Shown in pieces: positions 30,980-50,597 of a stretch of DNA of 64,000 nucleotides. Positions within the stretch are counted from its first letter, which is position 1; each line of letters begins with the position of its first letter. Source of the stretch: Setoptus koraiensis (taxonomy: Eukaryota; Animalia; Arthropoda); contig CM106585.1 of assembly GCA_048013815.1 (NCBI GenBank), positions 23,126,001-23,190,000 of the forward strand, read 5' to 3'. The notes below the pieces were generated by a model. That model was not told where the DNA came from. It made no database searches and saw only the letters and a list, made by a program, of their open reading frames with translations. A program made the position numbers and the translations under genes.

Positions 30980-31320
30980 CAACACCGAGCGAGTGTTTCT
31001 TCAACTCTAATTTACATTGTTATTAAGTTTACTTATTATTATTATTATTCCTATTATTATTATTCCTATTATTATTATTATTGTTATTTAAAAAATGCTG
31101 ACAACAGCACACGTTATTATTTAGTTATGGATTTACAAATACAACTTGCAACAACCAATGGACCGATAGACCAATTGACCATGACCGCTGCCAGTGACCA
31201 AAGCTGATGTGTTTTTTTGCTTCTTTTCGCAATCTACTACGGCTAGGGCTAGTGGATGTATTCGACTTTGGGGAAATTGGGTTTGCATGTTTAAGTTGAG
31301 ATTGTTGAGAGTTTACTTAC

Positions 31321-34300
31321 CGTTTACCATGAGCTTAATTACCTTTCTCAAATGGTGTCCATCGGCGCCCGATTGAATTGTGTTGTCTGGCGAGCTTGAT
31401 AGGTGGTGCGCATTACTCGCGCGACATTCATACAATCCCGAATCGTTTATAGAGGCTCTGTCTATTTTGAAGCTCTTGCTGGGTATGGTACTCATGTCTG
31501 TGTGTGTGTGTTTGAGTGGATAAATATAAATTAAATGTTGTCATCGTTTGTTATTTCGATTACATGCCGACTAGTGGTGGTGATGTGATTTGCGCGTGAT
31601 ACTTTTGTTTGCCCAGTGAGCGCAGGCAGATCGGGTGGAGATAATGTTACGCAAGGTTTGATCGAAATGTCGTCCAGTATTCGCTTTAATCGAACAGTTT
31701 GGAGACATACGTAAGAGATACAATGACGGTGTTGACCTGAGCCAACACTGAAGATTGTGTTGGCCGAACACACGAAAATGTGGCACAAACTAGTGAGTTT
31801 GCCAAAGAGAGAGAGACAGAGCGGCAAAAATCAACTATTGCAGTCACCGACGGCTATGTAATTTGGCGCCGGATCGGCCCCTACTATCGAGGTCCGAAAC
31901 GAACAAGAGGTCGTGATTGATGAGGGCAGCACCTTGCGTGCTGTATGTGCCGTTGCAACAGCAATTTGTATAAGTTGTTGGTTGTGTGCTCTGTCATTTC
32001 TGGCTGCCGACAAACGGAGCCCCAATGCGACCCCAATGCCCAGGTCTGTGTGTGCCAGGCGAAACGGCCAGCTTATCTGGCCGCGAGCTGTCGTGGGTGG
32101 ATGTAGCCGCTCAGCACAGGTAAAGCGAGCTATTCTTTCTGGGATTGGAAAAGCTCAAAAGTCGAGAAGCCCCCGCGCCCCCTATCATTATTATTATTGT
32201 TATTTTTGTTTGTTTGTTTTTCGTTTGTGTTCGTCATGCTGAATATCCATGCACATCCACATCTTCTTTTGATACATCTCTTGATAGTTGGCTCGCTTTT
32301 GACTGTGGCACAAACCAACCGGCACAGGTAACAAACGCACTCACTCGAACTGGCTAGGCTGACACTGGTGCTAGTGCCAACAACAACGATAGTCGTCGTA
32401 ATAACTGTACCGTTGCCACCGTAATCATTTGTACCTAAGTAACCATTAATGGACGGCCGCAATCTGTGTTGCACTCGCAACGGTGTTGTTAGTCCATTTA
32501 GTTAGTTGGCGGCGGCAGAACCACCAAACTGATGGTGCCGTTTTGTTGTTTGTTTGCACCCTGTAACGGCCTATTGCACGTACCAGCCTTTGAACAACAT
32601 AACAAATCGATTAAAGATTGAAAGTACCTCTAGGTGTCTCACAGTCTCACAATCTCTCTCCCTCTGTCTCTGTCTCCCTGTTGTATTATGTAATACGTTG
32701 TTCGCTCGCTCGCTCGCTCGTCCGTTTGTTTGTTTGCTCGTCTGTTCGTCTGTGTCTCTGGTTGGCTCTGGTGGTTGAATCATCAGCACCAACCAGAGCA
32801 CAACAACAGCTGATGATGTAACACGTGAGAATAATAATAATTATTGTTGTGGCGCTCGCTTTCTTCGGCCCCCGCGTGATTTTTGGCCGCTCGACGGCGA
32901 CCCGACAGGACAAAACAAAAAACGCGCAGACCCATTTGTTAAAACTTCTCTCTCCTTCGTGCGCATATATTATCACATTGTCAATGCTCTGTATTTAGCC
33001 AAATACTCACCTCTTAGTCTAGTCCAAGTTATGACTGGCGCTGGTTGGCCGCTAGCGTCGCATTCCATCTGCACTGATTTACCTGCCTTCACGGAAATGT
33101 CGCTAGGCTCCTTGAGCCATTTGAGGCGCACTGATTTTTGTGTTCATCCAACGGCCAGCAATGATGACCCAATAAGGAGTGTGCGATTTTTGGTTGGCGA
33201 CATTTAGATGGTTCCACATTCATTGATTGGGTTGGCAAGCGATTTGGTTTGGCAACAATCGGCATCGGTCATCAATTGTCATGGTGAGCGTTACGTAATG
33301 AAAACGAGAGAGCAATAAAAAGGAAGCCAATAGAAGAAGGGAGGCAATAGAGAAAGGGAGACGATAGAAAAAAGGGGCGATAGAGAGAGGAAGAGGCGAT
33401 AGAAAAGGGAGGCGATAGAGAAAGTGAAAGTGGTTAGTTGGTGATAGTTAGCAGTTGGCACGAGCAACAACAATATGGCACGAGCAACAACCGTCTCGGT
33501 TTGTGTGAAATGTGTATGTCAAGACACATTTCACGTTCACACAAAAGTATCCGTTCATCGTTGTGGTCGACTAATTTATGATTGATGACGATACCCGACA
33601 CACGACAGACTGAACGGAGCACGATATTCATTGGCGATGGTGCTATATTGGTCGGTGGCGATGAGTGTGGTGGTCAGTGCGATGACATGCGACCACCGCC
33701 ATCCATTTAGTATGTCCATCGGTTTGATAGCGGTCAGTCACGGAATCACTCGCAATCATCGCGTATGCCGCGTATTTGAACCTTGCGCAACACCACAACC
33801 TAGCTATAGGTTGCGGGGAGCTATCTAATGAAACTAGATGATGTGGTGGCAATAATAATAGCAATGATAATAATAATAGCAATAATAATAATAATAATAG
33901 CAATAATAATAATAATAGTAATAATAATAACTGCAATAGTAGTAATAATAATAATAATGGCGAAAATGATATAAATGATAAAAATGATAAAATGGTGAAA
34001 ATGATAATGATAATAGCTGTGCACACTAGACTGCACCTCCATTGGAAATGGTCATGCCCACACAATGGCTAGCTGACTGCCAAGAGAGTCATTTGTCGTT
34101 GTTCACTGTTGCCGAATCATTAATAACTATTACGTAACACACGTACACATAGAGAACATACGAGGCAAATAAATATCCTACAAATAGTGAGCGAGCGAGA
34201 GACTCACCATTAACGAATATTCGCACTGACGACGAATCTTGACCATTGTTATTTCTGGCCACGCAAGTGTAATTTGCTCTGTCGTATTGAGTGAGATTAA

Positions 34301-35349
34301 TAATTTTTAACATTGAGGCCGTATCATCCATTTGGGTTATTATCATGTGCTGCTGCTGCTGTTTCCTATTGCTGTTATTATTCTGGCTAGTGAGGTAGTT
34401 TTGTTGTTGCTGCTGTTGGCCACTTGTTCCACTTGATTGCAGCAACACTGATGATGATGATGGCGTTACTGACCAACTAATTCCATTGCTAACGCGCTGG
34501 TTATAATGATGATTGTATGAATTAACATAACTGTTATCAAGTAATTCATCATTCTTTCGCCATTCAAATGTCATCTGTTTTGCCTGCTGATCGTTATTGG
34601 CTGATTTGGCACCATTGTTGCTGTTATGTTGTTGTTGCTGTTGCTGCTGATCATTAGCAGTGGACGTCAGCGAGGCCGTGCAAAACAACTTCAACTCGGC
34701 GCCCTCCTCGTAACTGTCGAGCGCCGACAGGGGGATCAATTTGGGCGCCTCTGTTTGCGCAATCAATTAAGTAGATCAAGTGCACGTGGTAGCGGTAAGT
34801 GTGCGTCAAGTGATCGCCAGATGAAACCAGACGAAGGGCGCGTATCGATATTAATTAAATGACGTGATATGTATTAATTAAATGATCGTAATTGAATCAA
34901 TTATAGCAAGCGTCAGCATATTGCACTTTGTTGTGATTAGCCCGCTGGTGTGACTTACCCGCTGTACTGGCCAATGCGGTGTGATTTATTAAAAATAGAG
35001 GCACCAATAATATGATTGTTCCTATTAGATGATATTGCTTACAACGCCAATTTAATTGTGTCGACTGTGCACAATAAAATCTGACACTTGATGACGCCGC
35101 TGTCTGTCGTTTGCTGTTTGTCATTGTTGGTTGCGTCATCAAGACACGAGCTGTCTCTGTTTTGCTTGTTCCGGCAGCACAAATATCATCGTGGCCCAAA
35201 TGTGACCATGATGATATTGTGCAATTTGTTGAGACCGAATCGGGTGAGACTGACAAAAGACGCTCATTGATGGTGATCACATTAAATGGGTTAGTGGCTA
35301 CTCTGGGGCCTCTGTTATGCTGGCCGCTGTTTCTATTGGTGCTGGCCAT
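31321..35349 (-). CDS. Dscam-like: sDscam-beta-like cassette B: signal exon, Ig7-like exon, split Ig8-like exons
   Basis: Exons 34959-(35139 or 35349) ending in a hydrophobic leader; 34208-34750 (EAPKLIP..EEGAELKLFC..FEWRKND..DRANYTCVARN..VNG); 33011-33130 (VRLKWLKEPSDISVKAGKSVQMECDASGQPAPVITW); 31321-31497 (FKIDRASINDSGLYECRASN..LRKVIKLMVNG). All junctions are phase 1 with GT-AG. Confidence 0.85.
33849..33958 (+). repeat. Compound (AAT)n/(AGC AAT) microsatellite in a cassette B intron
   Basis: Runs of AAT interrupted by AGC, AGT and GAT. Confidence 0.9.
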
Positions 35350-38300
35350 CTCGTGACGCTGTTTATTTATGATGAACTAGATATATGTACAGATATTGTG
35401 TGCGAGTGTGGTTGCAATGGCAATTGCGGTCACATGGTGATGGTGGCAAAAAGAGAGAAAGAGAGTGAGAGATAATTTATTCAATTTCATGCTTCACGTG
35501 TTATTGCACAAAGTTCTGGCAGGAGCCTCTTTCTATCGGCCACTGGCCATCTGCTATCGGCTATTTGCTATCTTATACTGGCTGCTTGCTATTTGCTGTT
35601 CGTTATTTGTTATTTGTTGTTGGCTTGCAGGCTACAAAACTAACGCTCCGTCGTCCATCCTATTCCGATATGAAAGTCCGTTACGTAACTCACAACTGAT
35701 GCTGCTGTCCACACTAGGACATTTGACAGCGGCAACACTCTCGAGTGAAGCAACAAAATTGAAGCAACCAGGTGATATGTGTATCACCTTCTTATAGTGT
35801 AGTCTTATGGCGAGCGACACACAAATTCAGTGAAACAGAAATGGAAATGCAATTGCAATTGGAAATGTTGATTATAAACGCTGCTCTTCTCTCTCTCTCT
35901 CTCTCCCCGCCTCTCTTATCTTTCTTCTCTTGCGTGTGTGGCCCTATATAAATATGAAAAAGCGATTGCGTAATAACAACAACAACAACAACGAAAAAAC
36001 AATACAACCGCCAACGTGGGCACTGAGCCAGCCAACAACCCACAGCGGCACCGTTCACCTGTCGATGGCACCATCACTAAAACTGTTACTAATTCCACTG
36101 ATGCCGCAATGATATCAATGTGTGAGTAGATTTCCTGTCAACGACACTTGTTCTCTCTATCACTATCACTATGACCACTGCTACCTGCCTTCCCCCCACC
36201 CGATGCCATATGCTTGCCAGCTCGATTTATATAATATTGGCTGGCAGCTCCAACAGCAATCATGATGATGCTGATACATCATCATCATCATCGTCCGGAC
36301 ATTACGTAACATAATCCCCCTTTCTGTACTGTGTTCTATTGTGATGTTGGATTGCTTGTTTCTCTTGCTCACTACACTTAATCTATTCTTTGTGAGATCT
36401 TACTGTTGATTCAATTAGTTTGCTTTTGTGCCACATATTGCTGCTCATGGCAGAGCTGCCTCTGGCTGGCCGCTCAATTCAACTGTCTCTATCTGTCTTG
36501 TTGCTGTTGTTGGTTGTTATTGTTGGATTGAGCAGCGGGTTTAGTTTTGTTTTTGTTCTGTCTGGCCAACTTATATCGGCAGTGTTCTAGTTGGATTATT
36601 TTCACCTTTCTCATTCACACACTCATACATTTATTGCGATTCACTTGTGCAGTGTGTGAGCTCACAACAACGGTGTGTGTCGTTGTTATCGTAGGTATTA
36701 TTATTGTTGCCGCTGCATGATACGACTTACCTGATATCTATTTCTATTTGATTGTTGTGTGTGCTGATGCGAATCACATGTAACGGCAGCTTTTGAGGCC
36801 CCTTCCCAGCGAACGAGCTTCTCTTCGTTTCCGGTCGCTTGTTATTTTCTATTTGTGGCTTCTATTTCGAGCTCACTGTTCGTTGTTGCACAGCGCACAC
36901 AATTGGTTGGTATGATTAGATTATAATTAGTTCACCTGTGTTTATTTGTTGTTCTCTCAATACTGTTTGTGTGTTCAGTTGGAGTGTGCGAATATCGGCT
37001 GATTTGGGCGACTGCTGTTGTTGTAATTGTTGTCGATAACTGTTGTTTTAATCATTGCCGCCAGAGTCGCGATTGTCGATCGTTGTGTCTTGCGTAACTT
37101 GTGGCCCGTGTCTGTTTTTAGCGAGCAGCTGCTGCTCGATTGAACTGCTAATGGATGAACTGAGTTTAGAGTGTCTCACAAAGTTATTTATCTCTTTGAA
37201 ACTTTGTTTCGAGCTGTCTCGCGAATGAATAGTTGCGATAGTTGCGATAGTTGCGACAGTTGCAATAGTTGCAATAGTTGGCCCAAATGGGCAGTTTAGA
37301 CACTTGCCAGTCTACACAAGACGGCCAGTTGCAATCTGCAGTTGGTGAGCGGCAAAACTGCTCAGTTGGTGGTCGCACGACTCGCGATTAAAGGCGAACG
37401 CGAGCACGTGGCAAATGGCAAATGTGGTTTACTGCCGCTTGTGACGAGCATTGAATTTGGGCCAATTTGGTTAGTTTGGTTAGCTTGCTTGGCAGTTGGT
37501 TGGCGGGCGTTGAGGTAGCGACAGTGCGTTCGCTGGCCACCGTGTCGTTCAATGTGAGCCAGCCAATAACTGCTGGTCAGCCGGCACTGGGGCCAAGATT
37601 GTTTCAAGAAATAACGGTCAGCATATGTACATATACACGGTGTGTACAGCTACACTGTATATACACGGTACAGTGTATATGCGCTGTTCATAAGTTAACT
37701 TTACACAGCGCTTATATGATAGCGCAAGTTAGTGTCCAGTGTTAACGGTAACACTAACTACACAACACTAAAGTGTATGACGATGATGATGATGATGATG
37801 TAATATTACGTAACGCGTAACGCGGTGGCGTGTCCACTATAATCATTAGTTGTTTGTTGCACTAAATGCAATATATGGAATATACTAACTGGCACTAGCG
37901 ATGATGATTTGCTTTGAGCACTTTCACTTGCACTTTCGCTTGCTGTTGGCGTCGTTGTTGCACTTGCTGTCTCGTTGCGCTATCTTGTGATTCAAGTTGC
38001 CAGTTGCCGGCCAGTTTGCAGCCAGTTTGCGGCCACCAACGAGCTCGCACAGGCCAATGAGTGGGGCCCACGCTGACCGGTGCCACGGCGACCGGAGACA
38101 AGTGCGTATGGCGAGTAGTTTAGCTTGTGTGTGTGTTGCGTAATGGCCGATGATTCAAATGAACTGGCCAACTGGTTACTCCGTCGGCCACCAGCCAGCG
38201 ACTTGTAGTGTGTGTGCTTGTGCTGCAAAAACTTAAACTTGAACTGGCCCAAAGCCCGGATAATGATGATTGCTGGCTCCCCTTTATGCTCTCTACACTC

Positions 38301-39029
38301 TGGACGGCGTCGCTGGAGTGGAGACTTTATCTCTGCAACGTTCTCAGCACTTATTATGGCGAGCTTGTATTATCTCTCTTGTTGTGTGCTACTCACTGAC
38401 CATTGATAAAAGTAAGACGACGTCGTGCACTTATTTGCCAATATGTTGCCTTGGCGCAACTTTGCTTAATAACTTTATTAAGCTGTCCACTGGTGTTTCG
38501 GCTGGCCTAATAAAGGCTGGCTTTGCCCTGCCACTCGCTAGCTTTTATTCTTTTACTGTGCGGCCCCAATTTTCGTATCGAGCTCGCCAATTGAGCCGCC
38601 AATCTGGCCAGCGCCGATCATTACGCCACCAACAACAACAATGTAAATCTGTGAATGCCACAATCTAAATATTCCATCTAAATATCGCCCCTCATTGGCT
38701 CACTGTGTGCGTGTGTGTGTGTTTCAATCAGCTAATGATGGACCGGGCTAATGATCGATTCTGGTTGCCGCCGCCGCCGGTTGCTGCTTCTATCGCTGTG
38801 TCACTTGCTGTTGTCTAGTGGTCTGGTTGCTGGTCGTCGCTGGTTGTTGCTGGCATAATTATTCGCAAACACTGCTCGCAAATACTCGCTGGCTCCTCGG
38901 TGCGTCTCGCCTCAACGCTCGCATCCAACTGAGCACTCGGACGCGCGCCCGCTCGACACACTCTGTTTAAAATTTGTAACTTGCTCGCTCCTCACGGGCC
39001 CCACCAGCCAGACTCTGTGCCGAGTTTGC

Positions 39030-39099
39030 GCACAAACTCGGCACAAACTCGGCAAAAGCTCGGCACAAACTCGGCACAAACTCGGCACAAACTCGGCAC
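39030..39099 (+). repeat. 11-bp minisatellite (GCACAAACTCG) x6
   Basis: Five identical units and one variant (GCAAAAGCTCG); an inverted unit lies immediately upstream. Confidence 0.9.
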
Positions 39100-42000
39100 G
39101 AACAAACAAACTCTGCCATCAACGAGCACCACTTGCCTACCTTTTGCTAGCTAACCGATGGGCCCCGAACGGTCAATCCAGTCGCCGCGCCCCAAGACGC
39201 TCAGATGCGTTCCACGGCTACACACTGCAGCGCAGTGCCCCGGAAACCCGAGAAATCCGAGGAACCCGAGGAACAGCAAAATGGTGGCAAATTGGCTAGC
39301 TAAAAACTCACTTCACTCTGCAGTCTCTGCACAGGAGTCTCTACTCCTATCCAATCCAATCCAATCCAATCCACTCAGCTCAACTTCACTTGGGCGCTTC
39401 AAGTTGCCGCTTCAAATTAAATCAATCCGATTCAATTCAGTTTGATGCGATTGCATTCGATTTTGTTCGCTTCACTTCACTTGTATTCTTCTTGTGTCAC
39501 AACGGGGCCCACGACAAAACTATTATACAACTATTATACAACTGCAACTTTTGTACTGCTGATGACGCTGATGACGCCATCATAAATACCAATTATCTCG
39601 TTTATACACTATCGCTCACCTGTCATAATCTGCAACTGTCAATGGGCGCTATTGGGCACCGCACAATCTCTTGTGCCAGACCATTGCCACAATTTATCTT
39701 ATCTACCCATGATACCTGCTTCACCTGTACAGTTTGTTTGCGCAGGTATGTCGATGACGAGCAAATAAATGTCGCTCAACATACTAGATCATTTCACTAT
39801 TTATATATGTATGATGGCACAGTTTATTCATACATGATGGTGCATTTGCAAAGCAAGCAAACAATTTCTGTTTTGCTTTGCCTTCAACGGGACATTTGGT
39901 GCAGTGATGAGTGGCTTGGCAAAACCAAGCATCGGTAATTCTGATCGATGATCTGCACTCATGTGCCCATTTATACTGTGCCCATCGGGTTAAAAATGCT
40001 AGCCTCTATGCAAAAAATTGTATGAGCTAACTCATGCGATCATAATAAGTAATATATCTGGTGTATTGTAGGTTGGTTATATGACAATGGCGCGCACAAG
40101 TTTGGCTTCATTTCAGCGATTATTTGAATCTCGATCGGACAGTTGCAACCAAAAGTTATTGCCAAAAGTTGCGTCGTACCGTACGCAATGAAAATTGTGT
40201 AAAATTAAATTGTCGTGACACAATTAGTGATGATGTTCAGTCAGATGAAGCAGTCAGCGGCGATCATTCTCGTGTACTTACACTTTTAATTTTAATTGTC
40301 GTGAGCAGCACCTACAAGCCAGAACAATCCACCGGCCAGATAAATAGATGGATAAATCTGTTAGCGGTTGTTTCCACGGACAAATGTTGGTCGACGCCAA
40401 GACGCCCAATAGATGACCAAACTGTTACGCGACGGCCAAAGCGCCGAAACACGGCGGCCTGAATGAATTCCCTATCATCGATATGAGCAACAATGATTCT
40501 CATAACAAACAAAACCACTGGCAGATACTGTATTTGCTTGCGGTGGTTACAAGCTCAAAATAGTAGCGCCAATGTGCGCGACACGCAACCAAAGATCCAT
40601 CATCAATGATCCAATACAATCTACGATCCGATCTATCTTATGGCAGATATTAGAAACAACCAGGTGAAACTTGACCACAATTTGTCCCTTGAAAAGCCTT
40701 TTCTTTAGATTCACGATATCGCTGAAAATGGGGACTCGTCGTTTAGAATCGCACTGGCTACACCCAATACCTATGGCCGCCACATAGTATGGCGCAATAA
40801 CACGCAAACTGCACGCAGAGAGGATAATATTTGTTTACAGCGCAGCAACAATGTCGAAATTGTCGTTTGTCATTGTTGCTCGTTTGGTCGTGTGTGTGTG
40901 TAGGTTTAAATGATAAACCCCTCAATCATGTCATATATCACTAATGTTATTCACATCGAATGTCATGTTTGGGCGCGTCAAGCCGCGTCTCACAGTGCTC
41001 CCATGGAAGGAATTCATTTTTATTTTGCAGCGACCAATTGGTCAATTTCTGGCATTGCCCGGCATAGATGGCGCCTGTCAAGCCGAAAATAAATAAACTG
41101 CAACTACTGCGAGCTCAAGAGCGGGGGGCTTCTATCTCTGTAGGCTCGTTTCTGCAGGCTCGTCTCTTTGGGCTCTTAGGGCTCCCCGGCTCGACGCTCG
41201 GGGCCAAGCTTATCCAGATTACTTATCTGTTTGGACGCTCTATCCGCTGTTGCGACCGTTGGTTGCGTGGGCCTTCTTTGCAGCGCTTCTTTCGCACGGA
41301 CACAACCAACGGAGAGCGCCCTCCTTTTTTGCTCTCGAATTAAATGAGCGTGTAAACTTTTGAATGGTGACGTATGCTCACTTATCCCTGTTAGTTGGTC
41401 GGCTGGCCATTTATTAGATTCTCTCCACTGGCCCTCGCTCTCTCACTTGTTCTTGTCGGTGTTGGGGACTCTCGAATCGAGAGGCCGCTGTCAGTGTTGT
41501 CATTGGCCTGGCATCAGTGTCTCATTTTTGTGCTTTTGCACCACACTCTCGATGCCAACAAGACACTGCGCACTCAAACAGCTGCTTGGGGCCCATCTGT
41601 CTTGCCGCTCTCACAACAACATCCGATCTGATCCGACTTGACTCGTCGTTTCGTTTCGTCGATTCAATTCGATATGAAAGCGCTCGATGCGCCCCTCGAA
41701 CTGGAGGCGCCGGCACACAAAACGGCACTGACTCAAGATGCCAGCGTCGACGTTGCGACGGCGATAGCAGCTCTGCTGCTCGCTGCTGCGGATATATGGA
41801 TATCTGGATATCCCGCGACAGCACTCGAGCCACTGGTACTGCGAAACCGTCCGCACTGCAGAGGCCATTCAACTATGCTGCTAACACGGTGGATATGTGT
41901 ATTTATATACAAACACTGCTCACATATACGTATATATAGGCTACATGCAGTGAAAATAAAATTCGCGCGCGCGTTATCGAAAGAATTTGAGGCGCTTCAC

Positions 42001-45000
42001 ACAAACACCATATGGGGGCCATTTTTTGCATAGTGTCCAGGCTGCTTATTATAAATGATGATGCAAACACACACACACACACACTGTTGGTGTACGTCGT
42101 GTGTTTGCTTGGCCACGACTGGCCGAACACACAAATATTTGGGGCGACTTAGTTAGCCGGATTTGGTTGGAGCTCGCTGGACACACTGGTCATACAGGCA
42201 TGGTCACATGGTCAGAGATAGAGTTTCCTCTCGCTCTCTTTGGCCCCAGTGGTCAGTTTGTTGAGTGTGTGTGTGTAGCAAGTATTGAATACGGCAAAAG
42301 CTGATGGCAAACACACACACACAAACAAATTGAGTGAGCTCGCCAAAACAAATTGGTTGCTTTCACACAAGGAGCGAGTCGGCGAGCGACGGCGAGGAAA
42401 TAAGAGGCCATAGAGCGCAGCACAAAATGTAAACAAAACTGCGGGCCGAAATTGGAATTGGCGAGCCAGAGGCACGAGCAAAGTCCGGCGAGCAAGCCGA
42501 CGAGAGAGAGCAAAAATGATTCTTGTCGTCGGTGTTATTTCGTGCCATGAAAACTGCTTTTTTTCACTCTCTCTCTCTCTCGCGAACTCTGAATATTTGG
42601 AGCTGCAACCAAAACAGCAAAATACCCAAATAGCGGCCAAATAGCGGCCAGATAGCGGCCAGATAGCGGCCGAATAGCGGCAGTGGGGCGCGCAACTGTA
42701 AAGTGCATCGTAAAGTGGTTAGAGATAGAGACAGTGCCACTGGTGATATTGCTTGCCACTCAAGAGTGTGCATGACGCAATGATGTTTGCATGATGATGA
42801 TCGTTAGGCTTGGCCGGTGGCAGCTTCTTTTGAAATTCTTTTCTTTCCATTCTTTTCGCATTCGCTGCTGGCTGCCGGCTGCCGGCTGAGAATTTCTTCT
42901 TCTGTTGGCCGTGTCGCCGTCGAGTTGCCCAAAGTGAGTTTAGCGAGAACAATTCACTTGCCAGCGCCGCTTGCCGTGTCAGTGCCATCGACGGGGGCCT
43001 CAATACTATTGAGTCAATAGTAACAAAGTGTAGCTGCTGTGTTGGCGCCGCTGCTGCTGGCATAGATTTGCATAATAATTCCTATACATAAACTTTGCCA
43101 TTTTGCACGCTATACAACATTCCATCTATAACATGGATAGAAAGTTATCATCGCCGAATATAATAATATTTTTTTTTTCTTCGCTGGGGCCCCGTTTATC
43201 GCCAACTGTGCACTCTCTGTCTAATAGCTATAAAATGGATAAAATAAAATCGACAAAATCGACGATCGATTTAAACTGGCCCTGAGACAGACACGCGCAC
43301 ACGAGATTGCGATGATCGGACTAGACTGGCAACTAGAGACAAGGTGACACGTTAAGGGGCTGCGCATATGGAGCGGTTGTTGCTTCGGTGGTTGTCACGA
43401 GCCGCTCAAGTTCAAGAGATCGTCGCAACAACAACAGCAACGACAGCAACAACAACAACGACAGCAACAGCAACAACGACGCCAACAACGACAGCAACAA
43501 CCGCAACAACAGCGCATGGCTAACAAACAGACAAGTGAGGGCGAAATAAATAACAAATGCTGCCAATCGCGGCAGCATTTTTATCGCCTAATGATCAGAT
43601 CATTTTATCGTCTGCAATATCGGCTGCAATGTCGGCTGCAATATCGGCCGTAACATCGCCTGTATCGTGCGCATTACAGACTGTCTGTAATGGGGCCAGA
43701 TGCAAGCGATGGCCGGGCACCCTTGAGGAGTGCGCGCCACTTTAAAGGGTCCCGTTTTGTCGCCGTGGCGCATAATCATGAATCATCACATAGTTAGTGG
43801 TACGTGATGATATGTCAGGCCGCTACCACAACATGAGTGGGGTAAAGAGCCCTGTAAAGAGCAAATGTTTATATCGTCAAATGTGTATTACATAATAGAG
43901 TTTTCTCTCTCTATCTCTATTTACGCGATCAGCGATATAGCAGCACGATCGGCAGCGCTGACTTACGCGCCTCGTATTTCAGTCATGATTCAGCGCCCAT
44001 CACTGGCTGACGATCGCCTGGGGCCCAATCAAATTATTCTCGCCGCGCCATTGACGCTCCTCACATGCAGATGATCTAGATTTAAAGTTGTCGTTGTTGT
44101 CGGCGCTGTCGGCGTTATCGCGCGTCAACAAGATGCCCAAACAAACAACTTGTACTACACACATTTCGACCAGCACACACACAGCTGATGAGGCCAGCAT
44201 AATATTACAGTTTTGGCTGGATAATTCAGCCAGCGTTTTAGCCAGTCGAAACTTGCTGAGTTGCACAACGAAACACAGCACACTGGCGACAGTTTCAGTT
44301 TGACATTTTGGCCAAACTGATTCGATTAGGTGTGTGTGTTGTCGACAGTCGACCATTTTCGGCTGGCGGATTTGCTCCATTTGGTTCACAATTCGATGGC
44401 AAGCGAGCGGGCGCCAACTATCCGCGTGTGGATAGCGCCATTCGGTAATAGAGAGCGATGAAAAAGAGTGCACAAAAGTTGTGCAAACTCCAGACTCCAG
44501 AGTCCGAAGTCTGGAGTCTGGGGGACTCTCAAATGTGTAGGCTGCCGAGAGGAAATTTCAACAGCATTTCGTGTCTCATCTCGTTGGCTGGCGTGCACTT
44601 GATTAGCACTCGCAATTGCCGATTCCCCAGTTGTCTACACACCGTGATCGGCGCAGTGATTTTCGAAGCATCCGACCATTTGTGAGAGCGTGCTCGCTAG
44701 ATTGGCTGGCTGGCTGGCCGGCGAAACAAGACAAGTGGCAAGTAACGAGTGACGAGTAACAAACAGCAACAATGATTTCATGCCGTTTGCACTGGCACGT
44801 TGCACGGGATACTTACGGAAATTTCGTCCGACAACAACATTCTACTGAAGCAAAAAGGTGACTATTATGAAAATGATAAACTAGCACCAATTTCAATTTA
44901 AGAATTCACAATTTAAGAGTTCGCTTCTCATTCTTTTGTCCCCCTCACCTTGTTGTTGCATTGCCATCGAGGGCGATTACGCAACCGTGTTCATATTGTT

Positions 45001-46200
45001 CCTGTTGTTTTTGTTTTTTGCGTACACAAACAGAGCCATTAGTAGCTGCGCGTGTGCTCACCTTGATGCTACACTTTTCCTGTTTGTATAGGTGAGGTGC
45101 GTTATGAGGCGTCGCTACGTGCCGACGCCAGATACTGCATTCTGCATGTAACGTGGGGCTTGTGTGTCGGAGCAGCATCTTTCTACTTGGACGAATCACT
45201 CGACATCATCGCCGATAATCACCGAGAACGAGAGAGAGAGAGAGAGAGAGGGCGCGCGAAATTACGTAAACCAGTTTGTTTGTTGCCGCTTGAAGGGAGA
45301 CTAACCAGTCGCGAACAGTCGCTCGAATTCTCGAAGCGAATGAACAGTAATGTTATTATTATTATTATTAATAAGGCAAGATGAGAGTGGCTCTGTTTTT
45401 CAATCTAAATTCACTTTATTGTTAACCAGTTTATTTTTGTTTTATTTTATTTTTATTATAAGCACGCCATCGACAACAAGGCACTTTATTATTATTTCGT
45501 TGTGATTGGTGCACGCAATACAACAAACAAACAAACAAACTAACCAGCAATAATAACATCACTCAAGTAGCTGCTCGTACCTGTACACTGGCAAATGTTG
45601 TTGCGCTGTTGTAAAATTGTAGTTGACAGTTAGTAGTTAGCGTAGTTAGTAGTTGCCAATTACTGGCGCTTTAATTTTAATGCCTCTAATTGGCACGAAC
45701 AACCCAAATGGATGTATGGGCACTTAATACCATTACATAACAAGCTACAACAGCCAGCTAGCCAACCATTCGTTACATGTAATACCCATAGGCATTGGCT
45801 GTTGGCTTCAATCAATACGTTACGTGACTTCCTGTTTTGTTTGCTAAGACCTTTTTGGCTGACAATGACGATGACAATCATGATTACGGTGATCGCTTCA
45901 GGGTGCGGACAGAGGCCGACACACAAGCCAGCCACTGGTGCAGCGGGCAAGTGAGGCCAGGGGAGCAGGGCATGTAAATGGGGAGGGAGGGGGCACCGGA
46001 AGCGGGTGCTTCGGTTCGGGGGGGGGGCGGGCCGGGCAAGACATATACAAGCTAGACACACGCACACATTTGTAGCTAGGGTCTAGCTTGTATGTAAGTC
46101 TACAACAGAATGGGGGCGTAAAACCATTGAAAGGAGGACTATTGTTGGTGTTGTCGTGTGTGTGTGTGTGTGTGACACATGACGTGTCCGTTAGACTTAC

Positions 46201-49200
46201 CGTTGACTTTGATCTTAAATGGTCGCCTCAGTTCGCTACTGCTCGTCTGCTGCTGTTGCTGCTGTTCCCCCGTTGGGGCCCTGATTGAATCAGCTGATTG
46301 CCTCATCAATTCTGTATTTGCACCATTGCTGCTACTTACCAGGCATTCGTAGAGGCCGGAATCGTTCAATTGAATGGCCTTGCTGCTGAGATAAGAGGTG
46401 AGCCGATCGGTGCCCTGATTGAATTCGGTAATTTCGAAATTGGAGCCTGAACGAATCGGCGTTGAATCAGCGTTGAATAAGCAAAATAAGTGAAATGAGT
46501 GAAACGGGCGAAATGGGTGAAATGGGCGAAATGGGTGAAGCGGGTGAAGTGGGGCAAATGGGCGAAATGAGTGAATGGGCAAGGCGAGAGGGCAAACAAG
46601 AGAGGAGTCGCAATTAATTAAATAGAACAGCGACCAAGGGCGACAGTGATCATAAGCATCGGTGTGTAATGTTTACCTGTGGGCAGGGGCGAATCGGCGA
46701 AATTCCAAGGCAGCCGGTGCCAGGTGATTGCGGGCCTGGGCTGTCCCGAGGCGCTGCACTCGAGGCGAATGGGCCGGTTCAGGGGAACCTCTATGTCCGT
46801 CGGGGCGTTTATCCAGCGCAATTGAACTGAGCACGGGGCAGACGAGAGAGAGATGATTGATAAAAATAGTAGTAGTTGCCAATGATTCATGCTATCGCCG
46901 CTCGCAATCTCGCCCTATCTCTCCGAATCTCGCCGCACCTCACCCTATCTCGCCCTATCTCGCCACATCTCACTGTGTCTCGCCGTATCTCGCCGTGTCT
47001 GGCTGTATCTGCAGCTCGCCAGCCAGATCTGTCTGCCTGCTGTGACATAGCAGACGTAGCTGGCTGGCCGTATCGACTGCTCACATGTTAGATATATTAG
47101 AGATATCAGATATATTGGCGAGCGACATGCCGACGTGGCAACACAGCAGCCATCTAATCTAATTGGTACACCGCCTGACAAACGTCATGCAAATGATGAA
47201 ATGCGCTGATAAACCAACTGACACGACAGCCGCTGGCAGCAGCAAAAAAGAAGACGGAAAACGGAAAATGCAAAATGCGAAATGCAAAATGGAAAACAGA
47301 AAATGCAAAATGCGAAATGTCGAGACAACAACCACTCAACTAACCATTGACAATGACGCGCGTTGTCGAGCTGTCGTCGCCATACTGATTCTTCGCCACA
47401 CACTTGTAATCACCGCTGTCGCTGCCGGATAAATCACGGATTTTCAACAGCGAATGATCCGCATGAGTATCCACAATAACTCTGTTGTTGATTGTTGTTG
47501 CTAATTGAATCTGTTGTTGTTGTTGCTGCTGCTGCTGTTGCGACAACACCAAGCCCATAATTGGCCCATCCACTCTGTTGGATATGGTCGGCATAACAAC
47601 TACAGACATTGGGTTGTCATCTCGTGTCATGTTATGCAAATGACCTTCAGATAATGGTGACATTTTGTCGTTCAGATCGCCCACATTATCTGGCTGCCGT
47701 CGTTGTGTTTTGGCAACTATTTTGCTAGCAGCCTGTGGCTCCATCTGGCGGCCATAAAAATCACTAGTGTAGTCAATTTTGAAATTGTTCCTCTTATTAT
47801 CATCTTGTCGTGTAATTCTGTTGTGGTCCGACATTACATTTGAACCAATTAAATTGGCGCCTCTCTTGGTTTTAATCATTGTTGTTGTTGTCGCATTTTG
47901 AGCACCACCATCGATCGGTGGTTGTTGTGTGGAGTTGTCTGCACAGTGACGGTCACTATTGGCGGTGATTCCGGCGCGCGATTCTGTGAGGCCGCAATCG
48001 GTTTTGTTGTGTGTCGATAGATTGGCTTTATCGATAATTGTTGTTGCTGGGTAGTTGCTGTCGGAACGTCGGCTCAAATGATGGCCCGCATCAATGGCGG
48101 TCAAATGGGTATCGCGGTTGCTCGCGTCAGATATAAGGGCCGCTGCCGATCCAGTGTCCAGCCAGTTGAGGCCGGCATCATTATTGGCATTGTTGGCGCT
48201 GTTATTTGACAATGGCAACAGCGTCAACGGTTGGTTGTCCTTAAACCACTCTAAAGTGGGCGTTGAGGCACCGATTGATTCGAGGGTGCAAGTTAAAATT
48301 AGCGTACTGCCCTCATAGTGTTTGATGGTATCACGAGATTGAGGTACTATCTTGGGGGCCGCGAGTAACCTATTATTTGTGCCGCTAATACCCGAGCCGC
48401 CGGTCGGATTGTACTGGTATTGTTGATGATTTACACTATTGTTGGTGTCTCTGTGTCTTGTAAATTGAATTGCGTCTAGTTGCGTCAGTGCGTGTCCATT
48501 GTTGCCGTCAGCCAGGTATATCAACGCTGTTCCACATAAGTACAAATAGATTTGGTGATGTCGTTGTCGTCGTCGTCGGTGTTGTTGTTGTTGTTGTTTT
48601 GTTGTATGGTTGTATATTATTATATTGGCACGGTTACGTAATGGTGGTGGCGTGCAGTTTTGTGTTTATGTACAGAAGAATAAGAGAAGAAGACGAGAGA
48701 TTGATATTAGATGAGAAAATGTCGATTAGTATTAGATAATGTCGATTAGATATAAAGATTAGAGAGAGAGAGAGAGAGAGGGAGCCATTGTTGTTGTTGT
48801 GCGCCAGCAAGTTGACAGAAATCACATCAGCAGATCATTTGACGACGGTGATGCAACAAGATAAGTCGATATTTGTAATATTTATGTGGGCTCCTCACAA
48901 CTTGCCGTGTGCTTGTCGCGTCTAGCCAAAAAGAACTTTTTCAAAGTCAACCGACAGCAATATCTGACACGAGCCGAGCGACAATAATGAATATTGTCGC
49001 TACTGCAGTGACAAGAATGGCCAAAAAGTTGGCCTGTTGAGAGTGTTGCTCTCGATCATCGTCACTTCCTGCGACTGGCATTTTGTAACTATCAGTGGGG
49101 CCACAGCACACACTCGCTTGCCAGATTACGATCAGCTAGCGACGAGGAAAAGCCGATGAGGCAAACGGCGACATGGCTAATCTACATTGCATGGCTTATA

Positions 49201-50597
49201 CTGTATAAATATAAATTTACTAGGCTCTTTATCTGGCCAAACATTTTCTCTGTGTGTTTTTGTTTGTCTGGCTATGTGACCGTCGTCTCATCTAGATTCT
49301 GTGTGTCTGTCCCCCATTAGATAAGATCTGTTTGCGTCATAAAAACCATCATTGGATAAATCATAAATCATTTGACGGGGGCGAAATCTTCTCTTGTGTG
49401 TGTGCTCAAGCAACCGCTGGACATACCCGCCACTGGTTTGCCACTGGTTCGTTTGCGCGACACTTTTTCTGGCTCCCTTTTTCTCGTCTTTTTTCTCTCT
49501 CTCTCTCTCTCTCCCTCTTTCACTCTCCAGTTTGACACCAACGAGGTAGCCAGCAACGACTCGATGATAAGCCTACTTAAATTTTGCCAGTGCCCATAGT
49601 GCGGATAATATGGATAATGTGTCGTGCAGATATTGCAGCCACACTGACCAGTGGTCAGCGGGGGCAGTTATGCGAGAGCGCTTCGCCTTGGTCTAGTCCA
49701 GTCTCTGGCACAGAGACTGGGGACACTTCGAGCTTGTTTGCTCAGCAAACAAACAAACAAACAAAGATTAATATTGAGATTGCTATATAAGATGCGGTAA
49801 CCAGATATGCTTTTCAGGATTCGCGTTGTCGCCAACGAGGCAAGGTTTGCAATCAGACCGAGGTAATGGATTCTCGCATGCAAGTCGCTCGACTAGGCAC
49901 CGTGCAAGTGAGTTTATTGTTGTGATGCCATTGTTGTTATTATTCGATATTATTGTTATCGAAGAAAATCAGGGGATCAGTTTTCTTTTTGATAATAGTC
50001 CGTCAATTTAATTTAGTTTTGCGCCTAGGGCACACACTACACAAACAACTGCTATGTATGCAACACAAAAACACCTAGACGCCAGATTATAGCCGCCAGT
50101 TATAACTTTATATCGTATATTGCCACTCTAATATCGTCAACAATAATAAATGACAGTGTGTGTAAGTAGGCTAGGCAACTAGCAATTGCATAATCATCTC
50201 GATGGGAGCCTCTATCGGCAGTCACCGGCACTAATAATCTCAGGGGCAAATAATCTCAGGCACTTATTCGAATCGTTCAAGTCGCCTCAGCTGACAGTCT
50301 AACTGCACTTGCACCCCTTGATATCGATGCCCATCTATCACTCGGTGTCTTAACTTGGAGAGAGTGCAGTTTAGTCTAGCCGTTGGATTACAGTCTTAGC
50401 TGGACTTAGTTAGATCATATTCAAATTGCTACGAGCGTTTGTTTCGCTTGTTTCGTGAGATACCGTTGTCACATCATGGTTGCGTCATTCGTGTATGCAC
50501 ATCATAATAAACATATCATCTAATATTATACATGACACAATTATATAATATATTGCTTACCTAATAATAATGATGATGCTAGTAATGGTGACATCAT
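46201..50597 (-). CDS. Dscam-like: sDscam-beta-like cassette A: signal exon, Ig7-like exon with large insertion, split Ig8-like exons
   Basis: Exons 50561-50597, 47345-48526, 46677-46826 and 46201-46446, all phase 1. Joining exons 1 and 2 creates a signal peptide (MMSPLLASSLLL/ALIYLADG). Ig7-like APKIVP..EGSTLILTC..LEWFKDN..DSGDYKCVAKN; Ig8-like LRWINAPTDIEV..LECSASGQPRPAITW / DSGLYEC..FKIKVNG. The signal exon is the least certain part. Confidence 0.82.
46492..46580 (+). repeat. 9-bp minisatellite (GAAATGGGY) x~10 in the intron between the two Ig8 half-exons of cassette A
   Basis: Degenerate tandem units, pyrimidine-rich on the transcribed strand. Confidence 0.85.

What the first reader, a model, noticed from the sequence alone, without database searches (positions are those of the whole stretch)
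31249..50597. Two sDscam-beta-like variable cassettes with no visible constant region
Chelicerate sDscam-beta loci have tandem four-exon 5' cassettes (leader, Ig7-like, split Ig8-like), each spliced to shared exons for a further Ig, FNIII repeats, TM and tail. Cassettes A and B reproduce this four-exon, all-phase-1 layout and end in VNG|GTAAGT donors, but downstream on the same strand lie the convergent KLF15 3' end (about 340 nt away) and unrelated genes; no constant exons were found in the 31 kb downstream. Either the cassettes have become stand-alone secreted two-Ig proteins (soluble decoys or immune-type binders), or they reach a constant region by very long-range or trans-splicing, or the locus was broken by rearrangement.
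Basis: partly seen in the sequence, partly recalled or inferred. Interest (0 to 1): 0.78.

Follow-up and report, generated by a model that had tools for sequence, protein, structure and literature searches.

The report
Orphan short-Dscam cassettes, probably trans-spliced
Two stand-alone "front halves" of a nerve-cell recognition receptor (short Dscam) lie here with no "back half" on the same chromosome. They belong to 15 such halves scattered over this small mite genome. Most likely they are joined at the RNA level to one of two headless back-half exons on the other chromosome.

Summary
On the minus strand there are two four-exon units: a signal-peptide leader, one Ig exon and one split Ig. 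All junctions are phase 1 and both units end in G|GTAAGT (31321 and 46201).

- **Identity:** the Ig exons align position for position with Ig1 and Ig2 of mite short Dscam (sDscam).
- **No constant region in cis:** chromosome C1 has no FN3 or sDscam constant exon within more than 3 Mb. The 94 kb around the finding has no gap.
- **Genome-wide picture:** I count 15 such orphan cassettes at 9 loci on both chromosomes. All end in G|GTA(A/G)G, and most have their own leader. 11 of 14 distinct ones have AATAAA within 300 nt of the donor.
- **Matching partners:** two "headless" sDscam constant exons (Ig, 4 FN3, TM, tail) lie on C2. Their phase-1 acceptors recreate the junction seen in this genome's cis sDscam gene.
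- **Precedent:** Tetranychus sDscam-beta cassettes trans-splice, but within one locus (PMC9258826).

Best reading (about 0.58) is a split sDscam system assembled by inter-chromosomal trans-splicing. Secreted two-Ig proteins are the main rival. No RNA evidence was available. Evidence for selector/docking RNA pairing is only at motif level.

The scan had already flagged sister loci and one headless exon on other DNA of this genome.

The parts
50561..50597 (-). Cassette B leader exon: ATG plus the start of a signal peptide, 37 nt, phase-1 donor G|GTAAGC
   Evidence: Read directly from the sequence. The length is 1 modulo 3.
47345..48526 (-). Cassette B first Ig exon (Dscam Ig7-like, sDscam Ig1), with an insertion of about 245 aa of low-complexity sequence. 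Phase 1-1, donor G|GTTAGT.
   Evidence: Open frame. I-set E=3e-13 in two pieces. Borders. The acceptor at 48526 is the only phase-1 AG I found with a plausible pyrimidine context, so it is inferred.
46677..46826 (-). Cassette B second Ig, first half (Ig8a)
   Evidence: Ig_3/I-set match. 51% identical to the Ig8a exon of A. Borders.
46201..46446 (-). Cassette B second Ig, second half (Ig8b), ending ...FKIKVNG
   Evidence: Contains the DSGLYEC motif. Phase-1 borders.
46195..46200 (-). Terminal 5' splice site GTAAGT of cassette B, with no cis partner
   Evidence: No AATAAA/ATTAAA before +519, and only one GGTC in 700 nt.
34959..35139 (-). Cassette A leader exon: ATG at 35139 or 35124, hydrophobic signal-peptide core LIGTIILLVPLFLI, phase-1 donor G|GTAAGT
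34208..34750 (-). Cassette A first Ig exon (Ig7-like, sDscam Ig1) with Q/N-rich loop insertions
   Evidence: I-set E=3e-6. Aligns to residues 39-113 of the mite sDscam P0040. Borders.
33011..33130 (-). Cassette A second Ig, first half (Ig8a)
   Evidence: I-set E=4e-8. Aligns to residues 127-158 (Ig2) of P0040, E=5e-10. Borders.
31321..31497 (-). Cassette A second Ig, second half (Ig8b), ending ...LRKVIKLMVNG
   Evidence: The end motif is shared with all 15 cassettes.
31315..31320 (-). Terminal 5' splice site GTAAGT of cassette A, with no cis partner. Reading through it gives K then a stop.
31161..31199 (-). Cluster of five GGTC motifs, 121-160 nt downstream of the terminal donor of A. This is a candidate selector-like or protein-binding element.
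   Evidence: GGTCA is the third most enriched 5-mer downstream of cassette donors. Its reverse complement is enriched upstream of the headless exons.

Best explanation
Cassettes A and B are two of 15 autonomous 5' modules of a split short-Dscam (sDscam-beta) system.

**Proposed mechanism**
- Each module has its own start codon and signal-peptide exon, two Ig domains, and a strong terminal 5' splice site. Usually a poly(A) signal follows within 300 nt. The module therefore makes a short pre-mRNA whose last donor has no acceptor in cis.
- The matching 3' halves are two 'headless' constant exons on the other chromosome, at C2:17,693,135-17,695,066 and C2:7,519,957-7,522,260, both on the minus strand.
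- Each headless exon encodes the third Ig, four FN3 domains, a transmembrane helix and the cytoplasmic tail. Each starts at a phase-1 acceptor behind a CTAAC branch-point-like motif.
- Inter-molecular (trans) splicing would join any cassette to either constant exon. That would give up to about 30 receptor isoforms with different recognition domains.
- Transcripts that escape trans-splicing would end in GK-stop and could give soluble two-Ig by-products.

**Shown**
- The anatomy of the cassettes and headless exons.
- The genome-wide census.
- Compatible splice phases and the junction sequence.
- Nucleotide-level conservation of the terminal donor.
- Absence of cis partners.

**Inferred**
- The trans-splicing itself.
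- Any role of the GGTC/GACC motifs or of the second GGTAAG sites.
For: **1. The cassettes are sDscam N-terminal cassettes**
- The exons align with Ig1 and Ig2 of P0040, a 763-aa Dermatophagoides sDscam.
- A complete cis sDscam in this genome (L025, C2:2.878 Mb) has ...RVNG|gt followed by VPAHF.... That is the same junction the orphan donors and headless acceptors would make.

**2. Census**
- A profile of the Ig8 exon finds 11 whole and 4 split cassettes, and nothing else above E=1e-11.
- They lie at C1 0.58, 6.12, 9.95, 14.64 (two), 21.59 (two) and 23.16-23.17 (two) Mb, and at C2 6.65, 11.17 (three) and 22.33 (two) Mb.
- Unrelated genes follow closely. A lipoyl synthase lies 0.5 kb after the cassettes at C1:21.59 Mb, and a SET-domain gene lies 1.6 kb after those at C1:14.65 Mb.

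**3. The terminal donor is conserved at nucleotide level**
- The Gly codon is GGT in 15 of 15 own cassettes and in 6 of 6 outside cassettes.
- It is followed by AAG in 20 of 21. Selection on Gly-Lys alone would not do this.

**4. No cis terminal exon**
- AATAAA occurs 15 times, in 11 of 14 downstream stretches, against 3.0 expected. It is among the most enriched 6-mers.
- Poly(A) signals (AATAAA or ATTAAA) lie 37-186 nt after the donor in 12 of 15 cassettes.
- No conserved downstream peptide exists.

**5. The headless exons need a 5' partner**
- They have no upstream Met or signal peptide, and both have phase-1 acceptors.
- No Ig cassette lies within 12-13 kb upstream of either.
- They appear to be under selection. 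39 relatives at 54-63% identity keep the same open exon, and in 25 of them the called protein starts exactly at (V/M)PA(R/K)F; two more begin a few residues upstream.

**6. Most cassettes have their own leader**.

**7. Strand-specific motifs**
- GGTCA appears 14 times against TGACC once downstream of the donors (3.3 expected).
- In an unbiased scan GGTCA ranks 3rd of 1024 5-mers. Upstream of the headless exons its reverse complement ranks 8th and GACCA ranks 2nd.
- GGTC:GACC is 25:6 in own cassettes. In six outside cassettes, examined only after the motif had been picked in this genome, the bias recurs at 17:2.
- A second GGTAAG occurs in 6 of 14 introns, against 0.6 expected.

**8. Precedent (PMC9258826)**
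- In Tetranychus urticae every four-exon sDscam-beta cassette trans-splices to the constant exons of other clusters.
- About 60% of the sDscam mRNAs there arise this way.
- A constant exon with no 5' variable region also exists there.
Against: - **No transcript evidence.** None of the tools gives RNA data.
- **RNA pairing is not shown.** Overall complementarity between cassette introns and the introns upstream of the headless exons barely exceeds the same-sense control, for example 200 against 179 shared 7-mers. The GGTC/GACC motif was picked after looking at the data.
- **Both window cassettes are atypical of the family.** Cassette B lacks the GGTC cluster, and neither A nor B has a poly(A) signal within 300 nt. 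Both carry large low-complexity insertions in the domain that sets binding specificity in Tetranychus sDscam.
- **A poly(A) signal just after the donor also fits stand-alone mRNAs** with a retained last intron.
- **C17 may not be strictly headless.** A leader-like exon lies 600 nt upstream of it. If real, C17 could work without a cassette.
- **No precedent for distance.** In Tetranychus all the partners lie in one locus, where nascent RNAs are close to each other. Efficient trans-splicing between chromosomes has not been reported for this family.
Confidence: 0.58

Rival explanations
1. The cassettes are stand-alone genes for secreted two-Ig proteins, acting as soluble binders or decoys. The terminal GTAAGT is not used. 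The mRNA runs through it, translation stops after Gly-Lys or a few more residues, and the nearby poly(A) signal ends the message.
For: - Each cassette has its own leader.
- A stop follows the donor at once in 7 of 15 cassettes.
- AATAAA lies within 300 nt in 11 of 14.
- Unrelated genes follow closely.
- Outside contigs show the same orphan clusters.
Against: - GGTAAG(T) is kept at nucleotide level in 20 of 21 cassettes, although amino-acid identity between cassettes is only 40-50%.
- The tails after Gly are unrelated in length and sequence.
- This reading leaves at least the C7 headless exon without any source of a signal peptide or N-terminal domains.
- The G-strand ends exactly where Ig3 follows in cis sDscam.
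Confidence: 0.22
2. The cassettes splice in cis to something not recognised here. That could be a short terminal exon nearby, or a constant region reached over a very long distance, or one hidden by an assembly error.
For: - All the exons are phase 1, so many joins are possible.
- 500-N runs lie near two sister loci.
- Cassette B could in principle splice to the Ig7 exon of A, 11 kb downstream, giving a four-Ig product. The phases match.
Against: - No conserved peptide lies downstream of any cassette, and poly(A) signals come 37-186 nt after most donors.
- The window and its flanks have no gap.
- No sDscam constant exon lies on C1 beyond 9.4 Mb, and none lies downstream on the minus strand closer than 19 Mb.
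- Eight unrelated genes on both strands fill the 31 kb downstream.
Confidence: 0.08
3. A and B are decaying relics of a former sDscam cluster that lost its constant region by rearrangement. They are no longer functional.
For: - Large Q/N-rich insertions lie in the first Ig: about 245 aa in B and about 70 aa in A.
- The Ig8b of B departs from the family motif: VSS replaces ASN, and RRPFKIKV replaces LRKVIKV.
- B lacks the downstream motifs seen in its relatives.
Against: - All eight exons are open. The splice sites are canonical and the phases intact.
- The Ig hallmark residues Cys, Trp and Tyr-x-Cys are kept.
- Large in-frame low-complexity insertions are common in other proteins of this genome, as seen in the FN3 exons.
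- The orphan state is shared by 13 other intact cassettes.
Confidence: 0.07

Closest known systems
Tetranychus urticae sDscam-beta locus (Hou et al. 2022, Sci Adv, PMC9258826)
   Same: - Four-exon variable cassettes: a leader, Ig1 and a split Ig2.
- The constant region is one large exon.
- One constant exon there also has no 5' variable region.
- Cassettes are joined to constant exons of other clusters by trans-splicing at the ordinary splice sites.
   Different: - In Tetranychus all 33 cassettes and four constant exons lie in one locus. Three of the four clusters also have a constant exon in cis.
- Here 15 cassettes are scattered over 9 loci on both chromosomes, and none has a constant exon in cis.
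- Most cassettes here carry their own poly(A) signal.
- The docking/selector pairing shown there (selector 43 +/- 10 nt after the donor) is not evident here beyond short GGTC/GACC motifs.
Drosophila mod(mdg4) and lola trans-splicing (Gao et al. 2015, PMC4387717; abstract seen)
   Same: - Separate transcription units are joined by the spliceosome.
- An intronic U1-type site downstream of the donor promotes trans-splicing in mod(mdg4). Six of 14 cassette introns here carry a second GGTAAG.
   Different: - In the fly genes the 5' part is common and the 3' exons vary, and all the parts lie in one locus.
- Here the 5' parts vary and are dispersed, and the 3' part is common.
- Whether the second GGTAAG has any function here was not tested.
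Vertebrate clustered protocadherins and canonical chelicerate sDscam clusters (Yue et al. 2016, PMC4835542)
   Same: Many alternative 5' units, each with its own promoter, supply the recognition domains to a shared constant part.
   Different: Those systems work strictly in cis, as a tandem array upstream of the constant exons. Here the array is broken up and the constant exons are elsewhere.
Two-Ig and three-Ig secreted or GPI-linked IgSF proteins (Dpr, DIP, beat)
   Same: The size and domain count of the cassette product, if it is not spliced further.
   Different: - The cassette Ig domains match sDscam Ig1/Ig2 position for position.
- The cassettes end in a conserved splice donor instead of a conserved C-terminus.
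- A Dpr-like gene in this genome (L022) looks different.

Membership tests
sDscam-beta variable cassette | Two Ig domains homologous to Dscam Ig7/Ig8, at the Ig1/Ig2 position of sDscam | tested here: met
   - The Ig7 exon of A aligns to residues 39-113 of the Dermatophagoides sDscam P0040.
- The Ig8a exon of A aligns to residues 127-158, E=5e-10.
- A sister Ig8 exon aligns to residues 127-207, E=3e-13.
- Pfam gives I-set matches.
sDscam-beta variable cassette | Multi-exon cassette with its own leader/signal-peptide exon. PMC9258826 says mite cassettes generally have four exons. | tested here: met
   A and B each have a leader, one Ig exon and one split Ig, all phase 1. Leaders were found for most sister cassettes.
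sDscam-beta variable cassette | A terminal donor that matches the acceptor of a constant exon encoding Ig3, FN3 domains, TM and tail | tested here: met
   - All 15 donors are phase-1 G|GTA(A/G)G.
- Both headless exons have phase-1 acceptors.
- The predicted junction equals that of the cis sDscam gene in L025 and of P0040.
sDscam-beta variable cassette | Tandem array lying upstream of shared constant exons in the same locus | tested here: not met
   - No FN3 or constant exon lies within more than 3 Mb on C1.
- A and B are 11 kb apart.
- The 15 cassettes are spread over 9 loci.
sDscam-beta variable cassette | Selector sequence close to the donor that pairs with a docking site upstream of the constant exon | tested here: inconclusive
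   - GGTCA is enriched downstream of the donors, and its complement is enriched upstream of the headless exons.
- The strand bias recurs in outside contigs.
- There is no excess of overall complementarity.
- Cassette B lacks the motif.
Trans-spliced gene (mod(mdg4)/lola/T. urticae sDscam type) | Chimeric mRNA joining exons from separate transcription units | not testable with these tools
   No RNA data were available. The word search returned no eriophyoid protein longer than 622 aa that joins a cassette to the constant part, but those entries are ORF calls on contigs.
Trans-spliced gene (mod(mdg4)/lola/T. urticae sDscam type) | A 5' unit with a donor but no cis acceptor, and a 3' unit with an acceptor but no cis donor or start | tested here: met
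   - Cassettes.
- Headless exons.
- Caveat: a possible leader lies 600 nt upstream of C17.
Stand-alone secreted two-Ig protein (Dpr/beat-like) | A conserved C-terminus or stop, and closest similarity to a two-Ig family | tested here: not met
   The tails after the donor are unrelated. The best positional similarity is to sDscam.

The most novel reading that the evidence does not exclude
An animal recognition receptor is encoded entirely in pieces. Fifteen dispersed 5' mini-genes on two chromosomes each supply a different pair of recognition domains. They must be trans-spliced, mostly between chromosomes, to one of two headless 3' exons to make any membrane-bound sDscam. That would turn the facultative, within-locus trans-splicing of spider mites into an obligate, genome-wide way of assembling a gene.
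Probability: 0.5. Interest if true: 0.85.

Novelty: new variant of a known kind. Interest (0 to 1): 0.72.

Why it matters
- Dscam and protocadherin diversity is the textbook case of neuronal self-recognition built from tandem cassettes in cis.
- Spider mites showed that trans-splicing can add to this diversity, but only inside one locus where nascent RNAs are neighbours.
- A genome in which no cassette has a cis partner, and the partners lie on another chromosome, would show two things. Spliceosomal trans-splicing can carry a whole gene family. Clustering is not needed for cassette choice.
- It would give a compact system (15 cassettes and 2 constant exons in 49 Mb) for asking how two pre-mRNAs find each other.
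- If the cassettes instead make soluble two-Ig proteins, that would be a new secreted branch of the Dscam family.

Tried and rejected
- **RNA duplex prediction.** It then gave only long, loop-filled global duplexes with no common docking position. I did not use it.
- **Short-word BLAST and 10-mer pairing profile**. Peaks were barely above shuffled sequences. One site, TTACCTGATCGG upstream of C17, is complementary to the GATC(A)GGTAAG-type sites in some introns. It is a single case.
- **Global complementary versus same-sense k-mer sharing**. There was no clear excess, so Tetranychus-style docking/selector pairing is not demonstrated.
- **Search for a hidden cis terminal exon**. No conserved peptide was found.
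- **Synteny of cassette loci with metagenome contigs**. No shared flanking genes were found, so orthology of the outside clusters is unknown.
- **Rfam scan of 30-52 kb**. Nothing was found.
I could not read the DNA around the relatives' headless exons.
- **Joined model left out.** The step of joining exons into one spliced protein for a search or a fold was left out.
- **Searches not run.** I did not run the large representative-protein search. I also did not run a second word search, because the family identity was not in doubt.


Full report
**Where the window lies.** The window is G000:C1:23,126,001-23,190,000. The assembly has 48.76 Mb in two chromosome-size pieces, C1 (24.22 Mb) and C2 (24.53 Mb). 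One of them is named, from the eriophyoid mite Aceria tosichella. I therefore treat the organism as an eriophyoid-like mite with a very compact genome. As an example of that compactness, beta-spectrin sits almost entirely in one 2,136-codon exon.

**The observation.** Two units lie on the minus strand.
- Cassette A has a leader at 35139-34959 with a hydrophobic signal-peptide core. Its Ig exon is at 34750-34208, and a second Ig is split into 33130-33011 and 31497-31321.
- Cassette B has a 37-nt leader at 50597-50561, an Ig exon at 48526-47345, and a split second Ig at 46826-46677 and 46446-46201.
- All six Ig exons have lengths divisible by three, with phase-1 borders. Both leaders have a length of 1 modulo 3. 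The terminal donors are G|GTAAGT.
- Pfam finds I-set/Ig_3 in every Ig piece.
- A convergent gene with three C-terminal C2H2 fingers stops at 30979, which is 341 nt from the last donor of A. It is KLF-like; I did not test the KLF15 subtype.

So the description is correct at the coordinates given.

**Are these Dscam cassettes?** Yes, by position and not only by fold.
- Against P0040, a 763-aa sDscam of Dermatophagoides pteronyssinus, the first Ig of A aligns to residues 39-113 (Ig1).
- The Ig8a exon of A aligns to residues 127-158 (Ig2, E=5e-10).
- A sister Ig8 exon aligns to residues 127-207 (E=3e-13).
- In that protein Ig2 ends ...LRKSITISYN and Ig3 starts VPARFDEKY. The cassettes here end ...LRKVIKVDIQG, or LRKVIKLMVNG in A.
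- This genome also holds an ordinary cis sDscam gene (L025, C2:2.878 Mb). There an exon ending ...RVNG|gt is followed by an exon starting VPAHF....

**Is a constant region really absent?**
- The 31 kb downstream of A holds eight unrelated genes on both strands.
- A genome-wide FN3 scan finds no hit on C1 beyond 19.52 Mb.
- Searches with a Dscam Ig9-FN3 junction and with a whole sDscam constant exon find nothing of that type on C1 past 9.4 Mb.
- The window plus 20 kb downstream and 10 kb upstream contains no N.

A nearby cis constant region and a local gap are therefore excluded, as far as the assembly can be trusted.

**The wider picture.**
- The exons of A detect the same paired Ig exons elsewhere in the genome.
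- A profile built from eleven sister Ig8 exons (A1) finds exactly 11 whole and 4 split copies. Everything else scores at E=1e-11 or weaker.
- That makes 15 cassettes at nine loci. On C1 they are at 0.58, 6.12, 9.95, 14.64 (two), 21.59 (two) and 23.16-23.17 (A and B) Mb. On C2 they are at 6.65, 11.17 (three) and 22.33 (two) Mb.
- None has a constant exon behind it. For example, a lipoyl synthase gene starts 0.5 kb after the cassettes at C1:21.59 Mb, and a SET-domain gene starts 1.6 kb after those at C1:14.65 Mb.
- Most cassettes have their own Met plus signal-peptide leader 50-250 nt upstream of the first Ig exon.

**The missing halves.** I looked for it independently and found two.
- L022:2957-5260 (C2:7.52 Mb, minus strand) lies behind a Dpr-like gene.
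- L020:3135-5066 (C2:17.69 Mb, minus strand) is the second.
- Each is a single open exon encoding one Ig, four FN3 domains, a transmembrane helix and a tail.
- Neither has an upstream Met or signal peptide.
- Both begin at a phase-1 acceptor (...TATATCCAG|TA GTA CCA... and ...AAATCATAG|TG CCA...). A CTAAC branch-point-like motif lies 26-31 nt upstream of each.
- Joined to any cassette donor they would read ...V(Q/N)-V-(V)PA(R/K)F(N/D)EKF. This is the sDscam Ig2-Ig3 junction.
- No cassette-like exon lies within 12-13 kb upstream of either.
- The exon is conserved. 39 relatives at 54-63% identity keep it open over 560-622 codons; in 25 of them the called protein starts exactly at (V/M)PA(R/K)F, and two more begin a few residues upstream.

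**Is the last donor functional?**
- Across cassettes that share only 40-50% of their amino acids, the Gly codon is GGT in 15 of 15 own cassettes.
- It is also GGT in 6 of 6 cassettes from outside contigs.
- The next triplet is AAG in 20 of 21. This is conservation of a splice site and not of Gly-Lys.
- Beyond the donor, the read-through tails are unrelated. Seven stop right after Lys, and the others run 2-22 residues or more.
- An unbiased k-mer scan of the 300 nt after the donors puts AATAAA among the most enriched 6-mers. It occurs 15 times, in 11 of 14 stretches, against 3.0 expected.
- Poly(A) signals (AATAAA or ATTAAA) lie 37-186 nt after the donor in 12 of 15 cassettes.
- No conserved acceptor-plus-peptide fits in between.

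Each cassette thus looks like a short transcription unit that ends soon after a strong donor with no acceptor in cis. The window's own two cassettes differ from their sisters here. Neither has a poly(A) hexamer within 300 nt. B has ATTAAA at +519, and A runs into the convergent KLF-like gene.

**Known precedent.** Hou et al. 2022 (PMC9258826) reported the following for Tetranychus urticae.
- The sDscam-beta cassettes generally have four exons.
- Every cassette trans-splices to constant exons of other clusters.
- About 60% of sDscam mRNAs arise that way.
- One constant exon has no 5' variable region.
- A selector sequence 43 +/- 10 nt after the donor pairs with a docking site upstream of the constant exon.
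- All of this happens within a single locus. The authors argue that the proximity of nascent RNAs helps.

**Test for pairing elements here.** The result is mixed.
- For: GGTCA is the third most enriched 5-mer after the donors (14 occurrences against 3.3 expected), while its reverse complement occurs once.
- For: upstream of the two headless exons the picture is mirrored. GACCA ranks 2nd and TGACC ranks 8th of 1024.
- For: GGTC:GACC is 25:6 after own donors. In six outside cassettes, examined only after the motif had been picked in this genome, the bias recurs at 17:2.
- For: cassette A carries five GGTC in 40 nt at +121 to +160 (window 31161-31199).
- For: a second GGTAAG lies in 6 of 14 introns, against 0.6 expected. 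This recalls the intronic U1 site that promotes mod(mdg4) trans-splicing (PMC4387717; abstract seen).
- Against: the motif is short and was chosen after inspection.
- Against: cassette B lacks it.
- Against: overall complementarity is hardly above the same-sense control.
- Against: duplex prediction gave nothing usable.

I count this as a hint and not as a demonstration.

**Outside contigs.**
- A scan of metagenome contigs with profile A1 found clusters of the same cassettes in plant-associated metagenomes. L026/L051 hold three in tandem, L027/L028 hold two, and L048 holds one.
- In each case no constant exon lies in the 10 kb downstream.
- Each cassette ends in VRG|GTAAGT, and five of six have AATAAA within 300 nt.
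- L032 (JAALOO010000684.1) is an ordinary cis sDscam, with the constant exon directly after the second Ig.
- No flanking genes are shared with the loci here. The taxon and the orthology of these clusters are therefore unknown.
- They do show that orphan cassettes are not peculiar to this assembly.

**Conclusion.**
- The most economical reading is a split sDscam-beta system. Fifteen autonomous 5' modules and two headless 3' exons fit each other in phase and in sequence. They have no cis partners and are joined by trans-splicing. For A and B this has to happen between chromosomes.
- I put this at about 0.58. No transcript was seen, and read-through mRNAs for soluble two-Ig proteins (0.22) fit much of the same anatomy. 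The two fates may also coexist.
- One caveat concerns C17. A leader-like exon with a phase-1 GTGAGC donor lies 600 nt upstream of it. If real, it would allow a cassette-free one-Ig receptor. Nothing similar lies within 12 kb of C7.
- Hidden cis exons or a misassembly (0.08) and decay (0.07) are less likely, for the reasons given above.

**What was left out or blocked.**
- Joining the exons into one spliced protein for a search or a fold was left out.
- The scan had already noted sister loci (s1-338115, s1-336074) and one headless exon (s1-325903) on other DNA of this genome. I re-derived those points with my own searches.

Noticed in passing
L004:3300-5300 and L004:6950-8950 (G000:C1:14,643,300-14,648,950): Two tandem sister cassettes are 97-100% identical from the end of the first Ig through the second Ig and about 150 nt past the terminal donor. 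In the leader and the first half of the first Ig they are only 33-81% identical. The pattern suggests partial gene conversion, or diversification of the domain that sets binding specificity.
   Followed up: partly
L020, about 600 nt upstream of the acceptor at L020:5044 (G000:C2:17,695,6xx, minus strand): A leader-like open frame (MPQTLMVACIGSV...) ends in a phase-1 GTGAGC donor. It could give the C17 constant exon its own signal peptide and a one-Ig receptor in cis. It is a single hit from a loose pattern search over 24 kb, so it may be chance.
   Followed up: no
L026/L051, L027/L028, L048 (metagenome contigs Ga0209372_1000197, UOVY01000158, Ga0058701_10000007, Ga0268247_10001296, Ga0058701_10000321): Clusters of one to three sDscam-type cassettes, each with a GTAAGT end and usually a nearby AATAAA, with no constant exon in the 10 kb downstream. 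The source organisms are unknown, and no flanking genes are shared with this genome.
   Followed up: partly
window 30979-31560: After the stop of the KLF-like gene (30979, plus strand), the only poly(A)-type hexamer on that strand is ATTAAA at 31530. That is beyond the last exon of cassette A (31321-31497). The two convergent transcripts probably overlap in antisense across the exon, its donor and the GGTC cluster.
   Followed up: no
window 35400-46100: The 10.7-kb spacer between cassettes B and A has no convincing open frame and no Rfam match. It is GC-richer (0.44-0.49) than the rest of the window (about 0.38-0.42). A spacer this long is unusual in a genome this gene-dense.
   Followed up: partly
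L001:120-619 (C2:11,164,119-11,164,618) and L006:7580-8079 (C2:22,328,579-22,329,078): Runs of exactly 500 N lie close to two sister cassette loci. One is 6 kb downstream of the three-cassette cluster, and the other is between the two cassettes at C2:22.33 Mb. They may be scaffold gaps or withheld stretches.
   Followed up: no
window 31016-31100: An AT-rich simple repeat (AAT-type) between the KLF-like gene and cassette A matches about 60 places across both chromosomes at 76-96% identity. It is low-complexity sequence and not a mobile element.
   Followed up: partly
L022:9179-9562 and 7120-9108 (G000:C2:7,524,1xx-7,526,5xx, minus strand): A Dpr-like Ig exon and a 663-codon low-complexity open frame lie on the same strand, 2-4 kb upstream of the headless C7 exon. 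I did not test whether they ever splice to it.
   Followed up: no
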